Virus record (IMG/VR): IMGVR_UViG_3300042934_000594
Span: 62,001-126,000 of that record
Reading direction: 5' to 3' (one strand)
DNA length: 64,000 bases
A program made the translations under genes and the position numbers. Below the pieces are notes generated by a model. That model was not told the origin of the DNA, made no database searches, and worked only from the letters and a program-made list of their open reading frames with translations. Below are positions 42,551 through 47,293 of the stretch, piece by piece; position 1 is the stretch's first letter; every line of letters starts with the position of its first letter.

Positions 42551-42596
42551 TATTCTCTGTAGGGTTAAGCTTTTAATGAGGGAAAGAGGGTTAACT

Positions 42597-43352
42597 ATGT
42601 TTGAAGCACTTGCAGGAGTGGGCCAGGGGGTGAGTTACACACTGCCCGCGGACCTAGGACCTGGTCCGACGACTTTGATCGCCGGGGACGCCACGGAAGG
42701 TTACTTTGGTACGCTGACAGCGGCTGAGTTCATCAATGGTACGGCACTGGCCACCGCGATCGGGTTAACCGCAGGGGGCGTCATCAGCTCGCAAGTTAAC
42801 TCTGACTGGCAGAAATTTATTTGGCAGGGCAAGATTTTGTACATGCCCATGCAAGGGTTCCGTAACACCGTTACCTGGAATCAGTTGTACGCCCGTGGGG
42901 CGATCTACGGAGACGATACCAACGGTGCTTACCCGGCAGCCACGCCTGTGGCCCAGAGTGCCCGCGCCACGGTAGGCAATCGAACCTTCCGCGTCCGCGT
43001 CCCTAAAACCGCCATCGGTAACTCGGTGCCATTGGAAGTGGGCAGCGGCAGCGGCACCTCCGGGCGGGTGGACAACCACGTAACCTTCAAAGGCTCGGAA
43101 TGGAACCAGTTGATGTACCGCAGTACGTCAGGCATCGAGACGTATCAGGCGCGGGAGGACTGGGCTGCTTACACAGGCAGTCAATTGTCAGCCGGTTGGA
43201 CCATCATGCAGGAGAGTTCCAGTCAAAACACAGGAGGGTGCGTCATGCGTTCGTACCCAGGGTTTGGCATGGGTTCGGGTCTGTGCGTCTCTAAAGGCTT
43301 GTCCGCCGCCTCGGTAACGTGGAAACCGGTGTTGGAGCTGATTCAGCCTTAA
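42597..43352 (+). CDS. Virion/tail-associated protein, gp131-135-type domain (third paralog, no Mtd_N)
   Basis: GPGPTTLIAGD..GYFG, WQKF, FRVR, GSEWNQL and WKPVLE motifs. Confidence 0.78.
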   Translation: MFEALAGVGQGVSYTLPADLGPGPTTLIAGDATEGYFGTLTAAEFINGTALATAIGLTAGGVISSQVNSDWQKFIWQGKILYMPMQGFRNTVTWNQLYARGAIYGDDTNGAYPAATPVAQSARATVGNRTFRVRVPKTAIGNSVPLEVGSGSGTSGRVDNHVTFKGSEWNQLMYRSTSGIETYQAREDWAAYTGSQLSAGWTIMQESSSQNTGGCVMRSYPGFGMGSGLCVSKGLSAASVTWKPVLELIQP

Positions 43353-43389
43353 CGGCATAATGCCCCTCCTACGGGAGGGGCCTATGTCG
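43353..43389. terminator. Bidirectional hairpin CGGCATA...TATGTCG
   Basis: CGGCATA-at-GCCCCTCC-TACG-GGAGGGGC-c-TATGTCG. Confidence 0.82.
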
Positions 43390-43390
43390 G

Positions 43391-43810
43391 TCAGCCGCGG
43401 TACGCGATGTTGCCAATGTAGTCCAGGTTGTACTTGGCGCCGTACGCCATGGCCATCGCATAGATGGATTCGTATTCACCCGGGGTCAAGTGCAGGTTTC
43501 CTTCCCGGTAGACGTGCATGGCGTAGTAACACACCTTTTCCATCTTCTTGGTCATCTCCGTATGGACCAGGGGTAGGGTGGTGTGGAAGGGGTTAAAGTG
43601 CACCCCGTTGAGCTGGGTTTTGGTGTGTGGGTGATGGGACAGCATCTCCACCACCGCCATCAGGTCCACCAGTTCATTGGCCAGGTGCATGTACGCCGGA
43701 CTGTTCTGGTACTGCGACATCAGCCCAAAGGACTGTGACTTTAAAGCTTCTTTAGCGACCTCGACCGATTCCTCGGCGATCTTACTCAGCAGGTATTGTT
43801 GCCAGTTCAT
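43391..43810 (-). CDS. MazG-like all-alpha NTP pyrophosphohydrolase
   Basis: KIAEESVEV...K..FG...ELVDL gives the EExxE / ExxD metal-binding pattern. Confidence 0.72.
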   Translation of the reverse strand: MNWQQYLLSKIAEESVEVAKEALKSQSFGLMSQYQNSPAYMHLANELVDLMAVVEMLSHHPHTKTQLNGVHFNPFHTTLPLVHTEMTKKMEKVCYYAMHVYREGNLHLTPGEYESIYAMAMAYGAKYNLDYIGNIAYRG

Positions 43811-44199
43811 GCTGCACTCCGTTCGTTAAGGATCTCGGCCAGGGCCCGGGCCTGAGTAATGGGGGTGGTGCCAAACATATCGGAGAGCACGCCGTCGTGC
43901 TCACAGGCGTGCTCTTCCAGTTCTTCCATGAGCGTTGGATTGAGCACCGCCCATTGTTGCCACAAGGCCTTGTACTCGCCCCAGAGGTCGGTATTGGGCT
44001 TAAGTGGGGGTTTGCCCTTCCCTAAGCGCCAATCCCGCCCACCGGGCTGGTAGCCCTTCACATCACACTGGTAGTGCTCCTCAATGGTGCGTCCGTCACT
44101 TAAGCGGCAGAAGAGGGCGCTAAAGCGGCGGTCGCCTTTGGTAGAGCATTCATATCCACCAAATCGTTGATGTCGAAAGGGGGAGCCAAGGCGGGTCCC
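43807..44199 (-). CDS. NADAR-like domain lacking its own start; probable -1 frameshift extension of the exonuclease subunit
   Basis: -1 frame reads GTRLGSPFRHQRFGGYECSTKGDRRFSALFCRLSDGRTIEEHYQCDVKGYQPGG...QARALAEILNE; no in-frame ATG/GTG/TTG before the GTG at 44061. Confidence 0.6.
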   Translation of the reverse strand, partial: GTRLGSPFRHQRFGGYECSTKGDRRFSALFCRLSDGRTIEEHYQCDVKGYQPGGRDWRLGKGKPPLKPNTDLWGEYKALWQQWAVLNPTLMEELEEHACEHDGVLSDMFGTTPITQARALAEILNERSAA

Positions 44200-45896
44200 T
44201 TTTTTGCCAGGTGGTCTTCCATCATACCCAGCATTTGATCCAGTGTCGGTGCCCCCAAGATCTTCTGGCAGATCTCCACGGCGTTGGTCTTACCGCCCGT
44301 GAGGTTCACCCCGACCTCACGCCGGTGTTCTTCACTGATCCCCCGCATGCGACAGAACTCCATCACACAGGTTTCCCGTGCGATGTTCAACAGCTGCGAG
44401 ACGTTGGGGTACGTCGAAACGATGTCCAAGTCCGCTACGTGGGTGTAGATCAAGGTGTGATAGTTGGGGTAACCCCCCACACACTTCAAGCCGTTAGGGG
44501 CGGCCATGTACGAGGGTAACGTCACGATCCAGTCATGATGACCGATCACGTGCTCATCCACCTCCTCCACCATCCGGTCAGACGAACTGCCCATGACGCA
44601 GGGTTCTGGACGGTTCAGGTACCAGAAGTGCATGTCGTCACACAGACGCTTAGGGTTAGAGTTAAAGTTCTTGTAGTCGCTGTTCTTGGAATACATCGTG
44701 ATCGACGAAGCCAAATCGTTGGTCTTCTCGTCCAGCATCTCAAGCGTCATACTGTCGAAGATGTTGTAGACCCCGTAGCGAATCTTGTGCTTCTCCTGCA
44801 TGACTTCGTGCCAACGCAGTCCGGTCAAGTGATCGGTTTCAGCAAACTTCAACTTTGTGATCTTGAGTTCCTTCTTCAAGATCGAGTCCAGCGAGTATGA
44901 CGGTTCCTTACCGTTGGCCAGACGGGTGTTACGGTACACCGGCATCAAGTCGATGCACTGGAACGTGGCAGGGTGTGTCAGCCAGTGCCAACGGTCTTCC
45001 ACGTTGATCGACATGGTTTTGCCTGAGGCGGTGACTTTCTGCGTGTTGCCCCGCTTGAAATCAAAGTAGCGGTAGTTCGGTGGGATGCTCGGGTCGCTGA
45101 ACACGTCCTTGGGGTCAATGCCTTCACGTTGCAGCGCGGTGATGATTTTGGAAATGTCGAAGTCGATGTTCCAGAAGCCGAAGAACTCAGGCTTCCATTC
45201 ATGCAACTTGTTTAGGCAACCGATGACCACTTGGGCTGGGGTGTCGACCACGTGCACTTCGATCTTGCACTCGCGCTTTTTGAGTACGTCGCCGATGAAC
45301 TCCTCCGCACAGCGCAGGGTTTCCCCTTCCACGTCCTCAATGTCACTGACCCAGGACTTGAGGTAGTAGATCACCGCGTTCTTTTTATGGGTGACCGACA
45401 TGCAAATGATCTCTTGATCCTTGCTGTGCACGTTGGTCTCGATATCGCCACCGGCCACTCGGTTTAACGTCACCAAGTCAGGCCACTTATTGCGGTAGTC
45501 CGACTTAAGGTAACAGGTACTGGTCACGTCAGTGCCGTAGATGTACGGACTGCGACAGACTTGCTTTAAACCAAAGGCGGAATAATTGCCCGTGGCTTTC
45601 GCCAAGGCCTTCGGTAACTCTAACTGGGTGCACTGAAACTTCTGCAAGTTGCGTGCGTATTCGTAGTCTTTCTTCTCGCGGTGGTTTTGCATCCCCTTGT
45701 GGGTGATCCAATACGGGCGTTTGTAATCGGGGAACTTTTGCAGGACGGGGATCTTCCGGCCGTCTTTAAGGTGGACAATGACCTTGGCCACCAGCAGGTC
45801 GTGGTTCCCTTGCTTTTGGTCCACGACATAAGTGATGTGCTTGCACTCGTAACCCAGCACATCTTCCTTCTTATAACTGATATCGACTTCGCTCAT
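44100..45896 (-). CDS. Family-B DNA polymerase N-terminal half: 3'-5' exonuclease plus motif A (phiKZ gp82-like)
   Basis: ExoI GDIET, ExoII WNIDFDI, SYSLD, ExoIII YNIFD; motif A DLDIVSTYPN...NIARET. Confidence 0.9.
   Translation of the reverse strand: MSEVDISYKKEDVLGYECKHITYVVDQKQGNHDLLVAKVIVHLKDGRKIPVLQKFPDYKRPYWITHKGMQNHREKKDYEYARNLQKFQCTQLELPKALAKATGNYSAFGLKQVCRSPYIYGTDVTSTCYLKSDYRNKWPDLVTLNRVAGGDIETNVHSKDQEIICMSVTHKKNAVIYYLKSWVSDIEDVEGETLRCAEEFIGDVLKKRECKIEVHVVDTPAQVVIGCLNKLHEWKPEFFGFWNIDFDISKIITALQREGIDPKDVFSDPSIPPNYRYFDFKRGNTQKVTASGKTMSINVEDRWHWLTHPATFQCIDLMPVYRNTRLANGKEPSYSLDSILKKELKITKLKFAETDHLTGLRWHEVMQEKHKIRYGVYNIFDSMTLEMLDEKTNDLASSITMYSKNSDYKNFNSNPKRLCDDMHFWYLNRPEPCVMGSSSDRMVEEVDEHVIGHHDWIVTLPSYMAAPNGLKCVGGYPNYHTLIYTHVADLDIVSTYPNVSQLLNIARETCVMEFCRMRGISEEHRREVGVNLTGGKTNAVEICQKILGAPTLDQMLGMMEDHLAKKGPALAPPFDINDLVDMNALPKATAALAPSSAA
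44199..44205 (-). other. -1 ribosomal frameshift slippery heptamer A_AAA_AAG
   Basis: GCA AAA AAG is in frame in the exonuclease gene (codons 564-566). Confidence 0.6.
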
Positions 45897-46000
45897 AAAA
45901 ACACACCTGATTCCTCGCTCTGTAGGATTAAGCCCCCTGGTAATTCTTTGGCGTCCTATCTGTATGACTCAAACGCTTTTTTACCTAGGGACGCTGTACC

Positions 46001-47293
46001 ATGGGCAAACTATTACAACGCGTCTCCATTGAGATGCTGTCGGTCAGCAACAAGCGGCTCCTAGGGGCTGAACTGCTGGCAGTGGTCGAACAGATTTTCG
46101 CCGAGTTCCCCACCAGTGGCGCTAAACCGGCACGTTTCAAAGAGCTGACCGAGATCGTACAAAAGCGCACCAAGATGAACATCGAGGTGGCTTACAACGA
46201 TTACCCGATCTGCAACGCCTGCGCGTACGTACCGTCTCTGGAAGGCCACAACGGCACCACCTACGTTACGGGCACCACGCCGTTGAACATCCGGGACAAG
46301 AAAATCGACTACGGCCTGTTTGACCTGCACATTGACCTGGAGCAGGGAACGATCAGCGGGGAGCTGGTGGACAAGCTGCCCATGAAGATCGAGATGTTCG
46401 CAGGCTTGTTCAGCGGGGAAGAAGTCGAAGGCACCCCACGCGAAGTCACCGGGATCTTGTTGCACGAGATCGGCCATTGCCAGAACATGTACGTGGCTTG
46501 TGGCGACTACGTCTGGCTCAACTACATGCTCACCGAAGGCGTGGAAGTGCTCCTGGGCAAAAAGCCCAACGTCTACAAATTGCAGATGCTCAACGAGACC
46601 TACTTTGAAAAGAACGTCTCCGACAGCAAACTGCGTGAAGAGCTGCGCAGCGCACCCACCGAAGAGAACATGCGCCGGGCGATCCTCACCAACTGGCGTC
46701 TGATGCCGCGGCATCACCTGACGTCCACAGGTGACTACGAGCTGTCGATCAAGCGTGACGAGCAGATGGCAGACCTGTATGCCAGCCGTCAAGGCTTTGG
46801 TCGAGACCTGGTGACGTATTTCAACAAGTTGGATCGGCGCTACGGGGCAGGCAGCTACACCCGAGGACGCGTGGCCTTTGCGGTGGCCGAGACGGCTAAG
46901 CTGATCATGGGTACCGTGGGTGTGCTGCTGCTCCCGCTGTGGCCGATTTCACTGCCGTGTCTGATCACAGTGGCCATCTTGGCCAACGGTGACCATGAGC
47001 GCTACGACAACCCCACCGAGCGGATCAACAAAACCCGCAAGGACCTGATCGCACAACTGAAGTGGGCTGAGGGTGACGCCAACTTCAAAGCTAAGTTGCT
47101 TGAAGACATCGCCGTGATTGATGGCGTGCTCAAAGAGTACAACAGCAACCGCACTGCCTGGGATGCGATCGCCCAGACCCTGTTCCATTCCAGCCGGCGT
47201 CAAGCCCAGCTGAAGAAACACGAAGAACGCTTGGAAGGACTGCTCAACAATGACGCATTCCTGATGGCTGAACGATTTGGTTCCCTGACTTAA
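46001..47293 (+). CDS. Virion protein with zincin metallopeptidase motif and TM segment (phiKZ gp84-like)
   Basis: ILLHEIGH, EQMADLYA.RQGFG, hydrophobic stretch, YDNP.ER. Confidence 0.78.
   Translation: MGKLLQRVSIEMLSVSNKRLLGAELLAVVEQIFAEFPTSGAKPARFKELTEIVQKRTKMNIEVAYNDYPICNACAYVPSLEGHNGTTYVTGTTPLNIRDKKIDYGLFDLHIDLEQGTISGELVDKLPMKIEMFAGLFSGEEVEGTPREVTGILLHEIGHCQNMYVACGDYVWLNYMLTEGVEVLLGKKPNVYKLQMLNETYFEKNVSDSKLREELRSAPTEENMRRAILTNWRLMPRHHLTSTGDYELSIKRDEQMADLYASRQGFGRDLVTYFNKLDRRYGAGSYTRGRVAFAVAETAKLIMGTVGVLLLPLWPISLPCLITVAILANGDHERYDNPTERINKTRKDLIAQLKWAEGDANFKAKLLEDIAVIDGVLKEYNSNRTAWDAIAQTLFHSSRRQAQLKKHEERLEGLLNNDAFLMAERFGSLT

What the first reader, a model, noticed from the sequence alone, without database searches (positions are those of the whole stretch)
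43391..45896. Programmed -1 frameshift that would fuse the DNA-polymerase exonuclease subunit to a NADAR-like domain, with a coupled MazG-like gene: candidate replisome-tethered anti-DarTG module
Seen in the sequence: the gp82-like gene has GCA AAA AAG in frame (heptamer at 44205-44199, minus strand) 32 codons before its stop. Those last 32 residues are A/P-rich filler. The -1 frame from this site is open for 130 codons and reads ...RFGGYECSTKGDRRFSALFCRLSDGRTIEEHYQCDVKGYQPGGRDWRLGKGKPP...QARALAEILNE. It has no ATG/GTG/TTG until the GTG at 44061, which lies after the ~40 most motif-like residues, so the ORF track truncates it to 84 aa. A GGAAG element lies about 10 nt upstream of the heptamer and a GC-rich potential stem (GGGA..GCC-TT-GGC-TCCC) follows it. 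The domain's stop overlaps the ATG of a MazG-like gene (ATGA). Established: A_AAA_AAG is the efficient bacterial -1 slippery site (dnaX, IS3 family), and NADAR enzymes (DarG1, T4 gp30.3 type) remove ADP-ribose from guanine in DNA. Inference: FSA..DG.TIEEHYQ..K resembles the NADAR FSN..DG..TVEHYFQA.K motif. The phage would then make a 598-aa subunit and a 696-aa subunit that carries a DNA de-ADP-ribosylase or lesion-removal domain to the fork inside the phage nucleus. I do not know of this being described.
Basis: partly seen in the sequence, partly recalled or inferred. Interest (0 to 1): 0.9.

Follow-up and report, generated by a model that had tools for sequence, protein, structure and literature searches.

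The report
Frameshift extension of phage DNA polymerase
A phiKZ-like jumbo phage, like its relatives, appears to use a programmed backward ribosome slip near the end of one DNA-polymerase subunit gene to make a second, longer form carrying a 130-residue domain of unknown function, which no paper I could find describes.

Summary
A_AAA_AAG lies in phase at 44205-44199 (minus strand), 32 codons before the stop of the 598-aa polymerase gene. The -1 frame is open for 130 codons. It encodes a conserved domain (phrog_9995, E 7e-50) whose first ~45 residues have no ATG/GTG/TTG.

The frameshift is strongly supported. In 37 related loci the domain always follows the polymerase gene. All 26 loci with the domain in the -1 frame carry exactly one in-phase X_XXA_AAG heptamer in the overlap (C_CCA_AAG+stop, A_AAA_AAG or G_GGA_AAG). 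None of the 11 loci with the domain in the +1 frame does. Background is 8 per 22,439 codons. A distant relative encodes polymerase and domain as one ORF. Other phages fuse the domain to Rhc, another polymerase-complex protein.

The NADAR and anti-DarTG reading is not established. Pfam, hhalign and Foldseek against the PDB give nothing significant. Motif order, secondary-structure order, weak viral Foldseek hits and fusion partners (DUF4326, SLOG) do hint at a reduced NADAR-like fold.

The "exonuclease subunit" is really DNAP-N (N-terminal domain, exonuclease, part of the palm). The MazG-like neighbour is weakly supported and not conserved.

No paper found mentions this frameshift, including the 2026 phiKZ polymerase structure preprint.

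The parts
44100..45896 (-). DNAP-N gene (phiKZ gp82 homologue: N-terminal domain, exonuclease and part of the palm of the split B-family polymerase). The zero-frame product is 598 aa.
   Evidence: ORF. phrog_3011 E 7e-228. 57-64% identity to phiKZ-like polymerases. Domain content by homology to gp82 in bioRxiv 10.64898/2026.09.30.755723.
44199..44205 (-). Slippery heptamer A_AAA_AAG in X_XXY_YYZ phase; proposed site of the -1 tandem tRNA-Lys slip.
   Evidence: Sequence. The same heptamer, in phase, occurs in 8 further distinct lineages. It is the dnaX/IS3-type heptamer, listed as highly shift-prone in PMC5009743.
43807..44199 (-). The -1 frame extension: 130 sense codons plus the TGA stop. It encodes the phrog_9995 domain (no Pfam family), reachable only by the frameshift.
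   Evidence: Translation. phrog_9995 E 6.7e-50 over profile positions 2-122 of 124. 873 homologues. AlphaFold2 pLDDT 95. No start codon before 44061.
44100..44198 (-). Dual-coding overlap. The zero frame gives a 32-residue Ala/Pro-rich tail that ends the short isoform. The -1 frame gives the linker and the conserved N-terminal part of the domain.
   Evidence: The zero-frame tails are unrelated among relatives, while the -1 frame is conserved.
44216..44220 (-). GGAAG, a Shine-Dalgarno-like element 10 nt upstream of the heptamer; a possible dnaX-like stimulator, unproven.
   Evidence: Sequence. Only a GG at this position is shared by the other A-type loci, and fuller GGA/GAGGA/AAGGA forms occur in about 3 of them.
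43391..43810 (-). 139-aa gene whose ATG overlaps the extension's stop (ATGA); a weakly MazG-like NTP pyrophosphohydrolase candidate.
   Evidence: phrog_4856 E 4.4e-9, residues 1-60 only. 42% identity to the N-terminal 126 aa of Noxifer gp080, annotated as NTP pyrophosphohydrolase. No Pfam, NCBIfam or PDB hit.
43362..43381 (.). GC-rich hairpin (GCCCCTCC-CGTA-GGAGGGGC) between the convergent 139-aa gene and the plus-strand ORF 42576..43352; a likely bidirectional terminator that ends the operon.
   Evidence: Read directly from the sequence; not tested further.

Best explanation
The polymerase subunit gene is decoded in two ways. Most ribosomes read the zero frame and make the 598-aa DNAP-N. A fraction slip back one base on A_AAA_AAG, with both Lys tRNAs re-pairing on AAA AAA. 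These continue in the -1 frame for 130 codons and make a 696-aa DNAP-N with a compact C-terminal alpha+beta domain. This is an extension-type frameshift, like the phage tail chaperone G/GT or gag-pol, not the truncating type seen in dnaX. It places a sub-stoichiometric copy of the domain on the replicative polymerase. The arrangement is ancestral to the phiKZ-like Pseudomonas jumbo phages. In the branch holding phiKZ itself the site is C_CCA_AAG immediately followed by the stop codon (a 'slippery run plus shifty stop'). The window's branch uses A_AAA_AAG further upstream. Shown here: the site, the frames, the missing start codon, the conservation, and the existence of a direct fusion. Inferred: that slipping actually happens, and how often. 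Function of the domain (inference, lower confidence): an enzyme or binding module acting on modified nucleotides or ADP-ribose-type adducts on DNA at or near the fork, possibly a reduced NADAR-like N-glycosidase.
For: Site and frames.
The domain is real coding sequence, including the part before any start codon: phrog_9995 E 7e-50; 873 homologues, mostly free-standing proteins of about 125 aa starting M..F.W.R.GGYEC; AlphaFold2 pLDDT 95.
Survey of 37 loci (11 GenBank phages, 26 IMG/VR contigs): the domain always follows the polymerase gene.
All 26 loci with a -1 relation have exactly one in-phase X_XXA_AAG in the overlap. None of the 11 loci with a +1 relation has one. Background is 8 in 22,439 codons.
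The heptamers are C_CCA_AAG, A_AAA_AAG and G_GGA_AAG, exactly the three named as highly shift-prone in E. coli (PMC5009743).
The codon before the heptamer encodes six different residues in the C group (AAC, GCC, TCC, CTC, CCC, GTC), all ending in C. It encodes four in the A group (GCA, GGA, CTA, TCA), all ending in A. That is selection on the nucleotide, not the protein.
Most -1 loci, including phiKZ, Phabio, HPP-Temi, Noxifer and the window, have no ATG/GTG/TTG before the conserved core.
P0267, on a 45.5-kb contig beside a PhiKZ_MCP gene, is a single 698-aa ORF joining a distant DNAP-N to the domain.
P0149 and P0154 fuse the domain to an Rhc-type RNase H-clamp protein.
The dnaX heptamer alone gives about 14-16% frameshifting (bioRxiv 10.1101/2025.10.02.679949).
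One control: the polymerase-like gene of Burkholderia phage FLC9, which lacks the domain, has no in-phase heptamer in its last 100 codons.
Against: No direct evidence of the long protein exists: no proteomics, ribosome profiling or reporter data.
No conserved downstream RNA structure was found in the window (z +0.47) or across the A-type loci. No Rfam frameshift element matches. Efficiency could therefore be low.
Five -1 lineages also have an ATG or GTG at the natural N-terminus of the domain (PhiPA3, L032, 201phi2-1, Viktualia, PS119XW). The +1 clade mostly has GTG or TTG there. The free domain is therefore evidently also viable.
The 2026 cryo-EM work on phiKZ gp82-gp50 reports an active complex without any extension.
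The window comes from a metagenome assembly, so reads over its own A6 run could not be inspected.
Confidence: 0.85

Rival explanations
1. The domain is made as a separate small protein. Ribosomes finishing the polymerase gene restart nearby (termination-reinitiation or coupling) on a non-canonical codon. The heptamer is then incidental.
For: Free-standing homologues are the commonest form. Some relatives have ATG or GTG at the right spot (PhiPA3, L032, 201phi2-1, Viktualia, PS119XW). The +1 clade has GTG x5, TTG x2, CTG x2 and ACG x1 at that position.
Against: The window has no canonical or near-cognate start in the 20 codons before the conserved core, and the polymerase stop lies 79 nt inside the domain. 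At the equivalent codon the -1 loci carry ATA, GTA, ACA, ACT or GTT, so no start-like codon is conserved. This rival does not explain the perfect 26/26 against 0/11 association of heptamer with frame. It does not explain the conserved third base of the preceding codon. It does not explain the direct fusion P0267.
Confidence: 0.08
2. It is an assembly or sequencing indel in the A6 run. The true gene is a direct in-frame fusion, or the region is a decaying pseudogene.
For: The window is a metagenome-assembled contig (IMGVR_UViG_3300042934_000594). Homopolymers are error-prone. A direct fusion does exist in one distant relative.
Against: Eight other distinct A-type lineages, including the sequenced isolate Noxifer, show the same A6G and the same -1 relation. 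Seventeen loci use C_CCA_AAG or G_GGA_AAG, which have no A6 run. The domain keeps every family-invariant residue and has no internal stop in any of the 37 loci.
Confidence: 0.03
3. The shift happens during transcription. The phage RNA polymerase stutters on the A run and makes mRNAs with one extra A that encode the fusion directly.
For: Transcriptional slippage is a known alternative route to the same kind of two-product outcome (PMC5009743). The phiKZ non-canonical RNA polymerases have not been examined for slippage, to my knowledge.
Against: From general knowledge, runs of 6 A are shorter than those that usually give efficient slippage (about 9 or more). Most lineages use CCCAAAG or GGGAAAG, with only three identical bases in a row. 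The strict codon phase of every heptamer is a ribosomal, not a transcriptional, requirement.
Confidence: 0.03

Closest known systems
dnaX tau/gamma -1 frameshift of bacterial DNA polymerase III
   Same: The heptamer is the same (A_AAA_AAG). The gene encodes a replicative polymerase component. One gene yields two isoforms that differ at the C-terminus. An upstream SD-like element is possible.
   Different: In dnaX the shift leads quickly to a stop and removes domains (gamma is shorter than tau). Here the shift adds a whole folded domain. dnaX has a strong downstream hairpin and none is evident here. The protein is a B-family polymerase catalytic subunit half, not a clamp-loader subunit.
Phage tail assembly chaperone G/GT-type frameshift (lambda G_GGA_AAG) and retroviral gag-pol
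   Same: It is an extension-type -1 frameshift near the 3' end of a gene, giving a minority long form that carries an extra domain. X_XXA_AAG heptamers are used. The heptamer type varies between relatives while the arrangement is kept.
   Different: The genes and functions are unrelated. This one is in the replication module, not the tail module. In most lineages the heptamer directly abuts the zero-frame stop codon.
NADAR / YbiA superfamily (Pfam PF08719; DarG1 antitoxins, T4-like AdfN)
   Same: A collinear series of motifs matches: FS[NA][FL], DG, E.HYQ..K, [RK]LG[RK]..P, DW/LW, NP.L, L.[ES]D. The order of secondary-structure elements is the same as in an AlphaFold2 model of E. coli YbiA. 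Six of 29 sub-threshold BFVD hits are true NADARs. The fusion partners are those reported for NADAR (DUF4326, SLOG; and PMC9503650). E39, K47 and D106 are invariant or nearly so, and could stand for NADAR E43, K50 and E125/D.
   Different: No significant sequence or profile match was found. Foldseek gave no match to solved NADAR structures. The domain is about 30 residues shorter, lacking two short helices and the Gly-rich loop. The NADAR Trp133 position is Ala. No activity is known.
Chimallivirus split DNA polymerase DNAP-N/DNAP-C/Rhc (phiKZ gp82, gp50, gp155)
   Same: The window gene is the gp82 homologue. The domain is attached to gp82-type proteins (by frameshift or fusion) or to Rhc-type proteins, both parts of that complex.
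   Different: The published complex was built from the annotated 638-aa gp82 only. The extension and the frameshift are not mentioned.

Membership tests
Programmed -1 ribosomal frameshift site | X_XXY_YYZ heptamer in the zero-frame phase | tested here: met
   A_AAA_AAG at 44205-44199 with codons GCA AAA AAG.
Programmed -1 ribosomal frameshift site | The -1 frame is open from the site and encodes a real protein segment that has no start codon of its own | tested here: met
   130 codons. phrog_9995 E 7e-50, including the residues before the first GTG.
Programmed -1 ribosomal frameshift site | Site and frame relation conserved in relatives beyond what coding constraints explain | tested here: met
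   26 of 26 -1 loci against 0 of 11 +1 loci. Three heptamer types. The third base of the preceding codon is fixed across 6 and 4 different amino acids. Background rate is 3.6e-4 per codon.
Programmed -1 ribosomal frameshift site | Stimulatory element (downstream structure, upstream SD-like sequence, or adjacent stop) | tested here: inconclusive
   The window has no structure beyond shuffles and only a GGAAG 10 nt upstream. C- and G-type relatives have the stop codon directly after the heptamer (one extra codon in 201phi2-1). Seven of them have a CGGAGGA..TCCTCCG hairpin about 22 nt downstream.
Programmed -1 ribosomal frameshift site | Trans-frame protein detected, efficiency measured | not testable with these tools
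   This needs mass spectrometry, western blot or a reporter assay.
NADAR / YbiA superfamily | Significant match to the family profile (Pfam PF08719) or to a NADAR alignment | tested here: not met
   No PF08719 hit at E<=1 for the window protein or for 115 diverse members. hhalign against YbiA-type alignments gives probability 0.1-0.2%.
NADAR / YbiA superfamily | YbiA-like fold (alpha-helical core flanked by two small beta sheets) | tested here: inconclusive
   Foldseek finds no PDB hit (best E 3.5). BFVD hits to NADARs have only E 2-5 and TM 0.35-0.51. Family members are not in the top 50 of the reciprocal search. However, the secondary-structure order matches the YbiA model minus two helices, and 6 of 29 weak hits are true NADARs.
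NADAR / YbiA superfamily | Catalytic Glu, Lys and Glu/Asp (E43, K50, E125 of P. nicotianae NADAR; PMC11543638) | tested here: inconclusive
   Candidate counterparts E39, K47 and D106 are invariant or nearly so. The mapping rests on a non-significant alignment.
NADAR / YbiA superfamily | Hydrolysis of guanine-ADP-ribose or another N-glycosidic substrate | not testable with these tools
   This needs a biochemical assay.
Chimallivirus DNAP-N (phiKZ gp82 family) | Full-length homology to gp82, including the exonuclease motif and palm segment | tested here: met
   phrog_3011 covers residues 8-562. 60% identity to phiKZ gp82, with conserved DIET and YPNVSQ..NIARET segments.
MazG-like NTP pyrophosphohydrolase (downstream 139-aa gene) | Match to a MazG/NTP-PPase family profile | tested here: inconclusive
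   Only phrog_4856 at E 4e-9 over residues 1-60, and 42% identity to part of Noxifer gp080. No Pfam, NCBIfam or PDB match. An EExxE...ExxD-like pattern is visible by eye.

The most novel reading that the evidence does not exclude
The phiKZ-like phages place, by programmed frameshifting, a sub-stoichiometric DNA-adduct-removing enzyme directly on their replicative polymerase. The enzyme would be a previously unrecognised, reduced branch of the NADAR fold. ADP-ribosylated or otherwise modified bases would then be cleared at the fork inside the phage nucleus, complementing the nuclear macrodomain AdfM. The same small domain, widespread in early regions of N4-like phages and in giant polyvalent proteins, would be a new general anti-defence enzyme family.
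Probability: 0.2. Interest if true: 0.9.

Novelty: new variant of a known kind. Interest (0 to 1): 0.78.

Why it matters
phiKZ is the model nucleus-forming phage, and its polymerase has just been solved by cryo-EM from the annotated genes. If the frameshift is real, a second form of the catalytic subunit has been missed for over twenty years. It is annotated, if at all, as a 38-aa 'PHIKZ082.1' or as truncated ORFs. This would be only the second replicative-polymerase gene known to use the dnaX-type slip, and the first where the slip adds a domain. It would also give a functional handle on a large uncharacterised protein family (873 hits at 90% clustering, 793 at 50%). That family recurs with DUF4326, SLOG, DprA, RNase H and helicase domains in phage conflict proteins. 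Finally, it corrects gene models in dozens of deposited jumbo-phage genomes.

Tried and rejected
Pfam, NCBIfam and a PDB sequence search of the domain found nothing.
hhalign against two YbiA-type NADAR alignments, with default, global and low-mact settings, was never significant.
Foldseek against the PDB gave nothing. The reciprocal YbiA search of BFVD did not return the family in its 50 listed hits.
Folding the 99 nt after the heptamer gave no excess structure. A comparison of the downstream 45 nt across loci found no element shared by all.
An Rfam scan of 43000-46200 found no family.
Supplement look-up for Aravind's NADAR lists found none held. NAR Genom Bioinform lqad029 (DUF4326/DUF488) is not held.
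An IMG/VR scan for close relatives of the direct fusion P0267 found none.
The transposon-mutagenesis preprint and the ASO screen paper had nothing on the extension.
The two pieces were analysed apart.
Full report
**What is in the window**

All features are on the minus strand. An ORF at 45896..44100 encodes 598 aa. It matches the phage family phrog_3011 'DNA polymerase' over residues 8-562 at E 7e-228. It is 57-64% identical to the gp82-type proteins of phiKZ-like Pseudomonas jumbo phages.

A 2026 preprint shows that phiKZ gp82 is DNAP-N. It carries the N-terminal domain, the exonuclease and part of the palm, including a catalytic Asp. It pairs with gp50 (DNAP-C) and the RNase H-clamp protein Rhc (gp155) (bioRxiv 10.64898/2026.09.30.755723). 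'Exonuclease subunit' is therefore too narrow a name.

The window is part of IMG/VR contig IMGVR_UViG_3300042934_000594, 269,430 bp.

- The codons read CTG GCA AAA AAG GGA. A_AAA_AAG therefore sits at 44205-44199 in exact X_XXY_YYZ phase, and AAG is codon 566, 32 codons before the stop.
- The -1 frame is open and, from GGG at 44199, runs 130 codons to TGA at 43809-43807.
- Its first ATG/GTG/TTG is the GTG at 44061.
- The 129-aa piece downstream of the site matches phrog_9995 (function unknown) at E 6.7e-50 across profile positions 2-122 of 124. The roughly 45 residues ahead of that GTG are thus genuine, conserved coding sequence with no way to be initiated.
- The stop overlaps the ATG of a 139-aa gene as ATGA.
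Its loop would be 2 nt. The 99 nt after the site fold no better than shuffles (z +0.47). No Rfam family matches.

**Comparative test of the frameshift**

I collected 11 GenBank relatives and 26 IMG/VR loci found with a polymerase alignment. In all 37, an HMM of the domain hits directly downstream of the polymerase gene. There are three arrangements.

- **(a) C or G type.** The domain is in the -1 frame, and C_CCA_AAG is followed at once by the polymerase stop. This group holds phiKZ, Phabio, PS119XW, HPP-Temi, Viktualia, PhiPA3 and several metagenome contigs. 201phi2-1 has one extra codon before the stop. One contig (L016) has G_GGA_AAG+TAG instead.
- **(b) A type.** The domain is in the -1 frame, and A_AAA_AAG lies 8-32 codons before the stop. 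This group holds the window, Noxifer and seven further distinct lineages.
- **(c) +1 type.** The domain is in the +1 frame (D6, Psa21, RVTF4 and relatives).

The main results:

- Every one of the 26 -1 loci has exactly one in-phase XXXAAAG inside the two-frame overlap. None of the 11 +1 loci has one.
- Elsewhere in these polymerase genes the motif occurs 8 times in 22,439 codons.
- The codon before the heptamer encodes N, A, S, L, P or V in the C group yet always ends in C. It encodes A, G, L or S in the A group yet always ends in A. That is selection on the nucleotide.
- The dnaX heptamer alone gives about 14-16% shifting (bioRxiv 10.1101/2025.10.02.679949).
- A stop codon right after a slippery run is a classical stimulator (the 'shifty stop'; from my own knowledge).
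- Most -1 loci, including phiKZ, Phabio, HPP-Temi, Noxifer and the window, have no canonical start before the conserved core. This is why deposited annotations show only 38-aa or 95-100-aa fragments, or nothing at all.
- The zero-frame tails after the A-type heptamers are unrelated to one another, while the -1 frame is conserved.

**Independent support from gene fusions**

- A representative-level profile search found 793 family members.
- P0267 (698 aa) is a distant DNAP-N (25% identity to the window protein; phrog_3011 E 1.5e-96). It is joined in frame to the domain (phrog_9995, residues 560-677).
- It is one uninterrupted ORF on a 45.5-kb contig, next to a PhiKZ-type capsid gene. The predicted long protein therefore exists as an ordinary gene elsewhere.
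- P0149 and P0154 carry the domain at the N-terminus of an Rhc-type RNase H-clamp protein. Rhc is another subunit of the same polymerase complex.
- A FastTree of the polymerase proteins, rooted on P0267, puts the G-type locus basal and the A type as a clade. The C type forms a grade and the +1 type a derived clade (no support values examined). The -1 arrangement therefore looks ancestral to the group.
- One control: the polymerase-like gene of Burkholderia phage FLC9, which lacks the domain, has no in-phase heptamer in its last 100 codons.

**Rivals**

- *Independent initiation.* This is possible where an ATG or GTG sits at the natural N-terminus (PhiPA3, L032, 201phi2-1, Viktualia, PS119XW, and most of the +1 clade). 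It cannot explain the window, where no canonical or near-cognate start exists (my reading of the sequence). It also cannot explain the heptamer-frame association.
- *Assembly error.* This is excluded by nine independent A6 lineages and by the non-homopolymer heptamers.
- *Transcriptional slippage.* This is unlikely on such short runs, and it does not require codon phase.

**What the domain is**

- Pfam, NCBIfam and PDB sequence searches are empty.
- AlphaFold2 gives a confident compact alpha+beta model (pLDDT 95).
- Foldseek finds no PDB match (best E 3.5). In BFVD it finds only the domain's own family.
- Against YbiA-type NADAR alignments, hhalign gives at most 0.2% probability.
- No PF08719 hit appears at E<=1 in 115 diverse members. 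Membership of NADAR is therefore not shown.

Four weaker observations still point that way.

- The order of secondary-structure elements equals that of an AlphaFold2 YbiA model, minus two short helices and a Gly-rich loop.
- Six of the domain's 29 sub-threshold BFVD hits are bona fide NADARs by the reciprocal search. Eight more are DUF4326 proteins.
- The domain's fusion partners are DUF4326 (20 of 115), SLOG families, DprA, DUF488, RNase H, an AlkB-like oxygenase and an SF1 helicase. DUF4326 and SLOG are the partners reported for NADAR and Macro domains in viral NAD/ADP-ribose systems (PMC9503650).

Other context:

- Invariant E39, K47 and D106 could correspond to NADAR E43, K50 and E125/D (PMC11543638). 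This mapping rests on a non-significant alignment.
- The domain also occurs free-standing in the early region of an N4-like phage. It is embedded in 35 of the top 150 representatives that are 1,000-6,146 aa long.
- Chimalliviruses are known to need a nuclear ADP-ribose-removing macrodomain against DarTG2. T4-like phages use a NADAR against DarT1 (PMC13309987). The anti-DarT idea is therefore reasonable, but it is untested.

**The downstream gene**

- The 139-aa protein has only a partial PHROG match to an NTP pyrophosphohydrolase family (E 4e-9, residues 1-60).
- It is 42% identical to part of Noxifer gp080.
- There is no Pfam, NCBIfam or PDB match.
- In phiKZ, Phabio and others the next gene is a convergent virion gene instead. 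The MazG link is therefore not a conserved part of the module.

**Literature**

Full-text searches found no description of this frameshift or of the extension. The searches covered phiKZ with frameshift, PHIKZ082.1, jumbo phage with programmed frameshift, chimallivirus with ribosomal frameshift, and gp82. The 2026 polymerase structure paper and the 2025 ASO screen do not mention it. The library is incomplete, so prior description elsewhere cannot be excluded.

**Verdict**

- A conserved, extension-type -1 programmed frameshift in the DNAP-N gene of phiKZ-like phages is the best explanation (confidence about 0.85).
- The added domain belongs to a large uncharacterised family linked to replication proteins and to nucleotide/ADP-ribose conflict domains.
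- A reduced NADAR-like enzyme is a live but unproven reading (about 0.3). The specific anti-DarTG role is a hypothesis.

Noticed in passing
L004, L005, L007, L018-L026, L035 (D6, Psa21, RVTF4 clade), junction of the polymerase and domain genes: In this clade the domain is in the +1 frame and the polymerase reads ...GAA AAG AAG xxx GTA TCA GTG GAA GCG GTA TGA. The codon at the domain's natural N-terminus is GTG (5 loci), TTG (2), CTG (2) or ACG (1), all single-mismatch relatives of ATG. L035 has none at all. GAAAAGAAG is conserved in every member. A -2 slip of tRNA-Lys from AAG to AAA would also reach the domain frame. How L035, L018, L022 and L023 express the domain is unexplained.
   Followed up: partly
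L010 2650-2955 (PhiPA3, minus strand of the locus): The PhiPA3 DNAP-N gene is interrupted by a group I intron (Rfam RF00028, 71.7 bits, E 2.8e-18). The deposited 'DNA polymerase' CDS therefore stops inside the intron. The second exon runs on to C_CCA_AAG TAA, and gene 084 is the domain.
   Followed up: yes
L008 595-1929 (HPP-Temi): The DNAP-N gene of HPP-Temi is split in the annotation by an HNH endonuclease gene lying between two 'DNA polymerase' CDS pieces. This is probably an intron or mobile insertion at a different site from the PhiPA3 intron.
   Followed up: no
L006, L008, L010, L032, L033, L034, L037, about 22 nt downstream of C_CCA_AAG: A 7-bp hairpin CGGAGGA(N9)TCCTCCG, encoded by the R-G-G-Y-E-C-S-S codons of the domain, recurs in seven C-type loci. 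It is weak or absent in phiKZ and Phabio. It could be a frameshift stimulator or simply a by-product of coding.
   Followed up: partly
window 43362-43381: A GC-rich hairpin GCCCCTCC-CGTA-GGAGGGGC lies between the convergent 139-aa gene and the plus-strand ORF 42576..43352. It is a likely bidirectional terminator.
   Followed up: no
P0168-P0265 (representatives of 1,000-6,146 aa): 35 of the top 150 family representatives are giant multidomain proteins with the domain embedded at varied positions. Seven of the smaller ones (1,002-1,529 aa) were scanned: three showed an SF1 helicase, cpYpsA+DUF4326 or RNase H, and four had no Pfam match at all. These look like polyvalent proteins of phages or conjugative elements.
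   Followed up: partly
GenBank records of phiKZ-like phages: Many deposited phiKZ-type genomes annotate nothing, or only 38-aa and 95-100-aa fragments, over the domain. One record (U5, MT995928.1) labels the region 'major capsid protein'. The gene models need correction.
   Followed up: no
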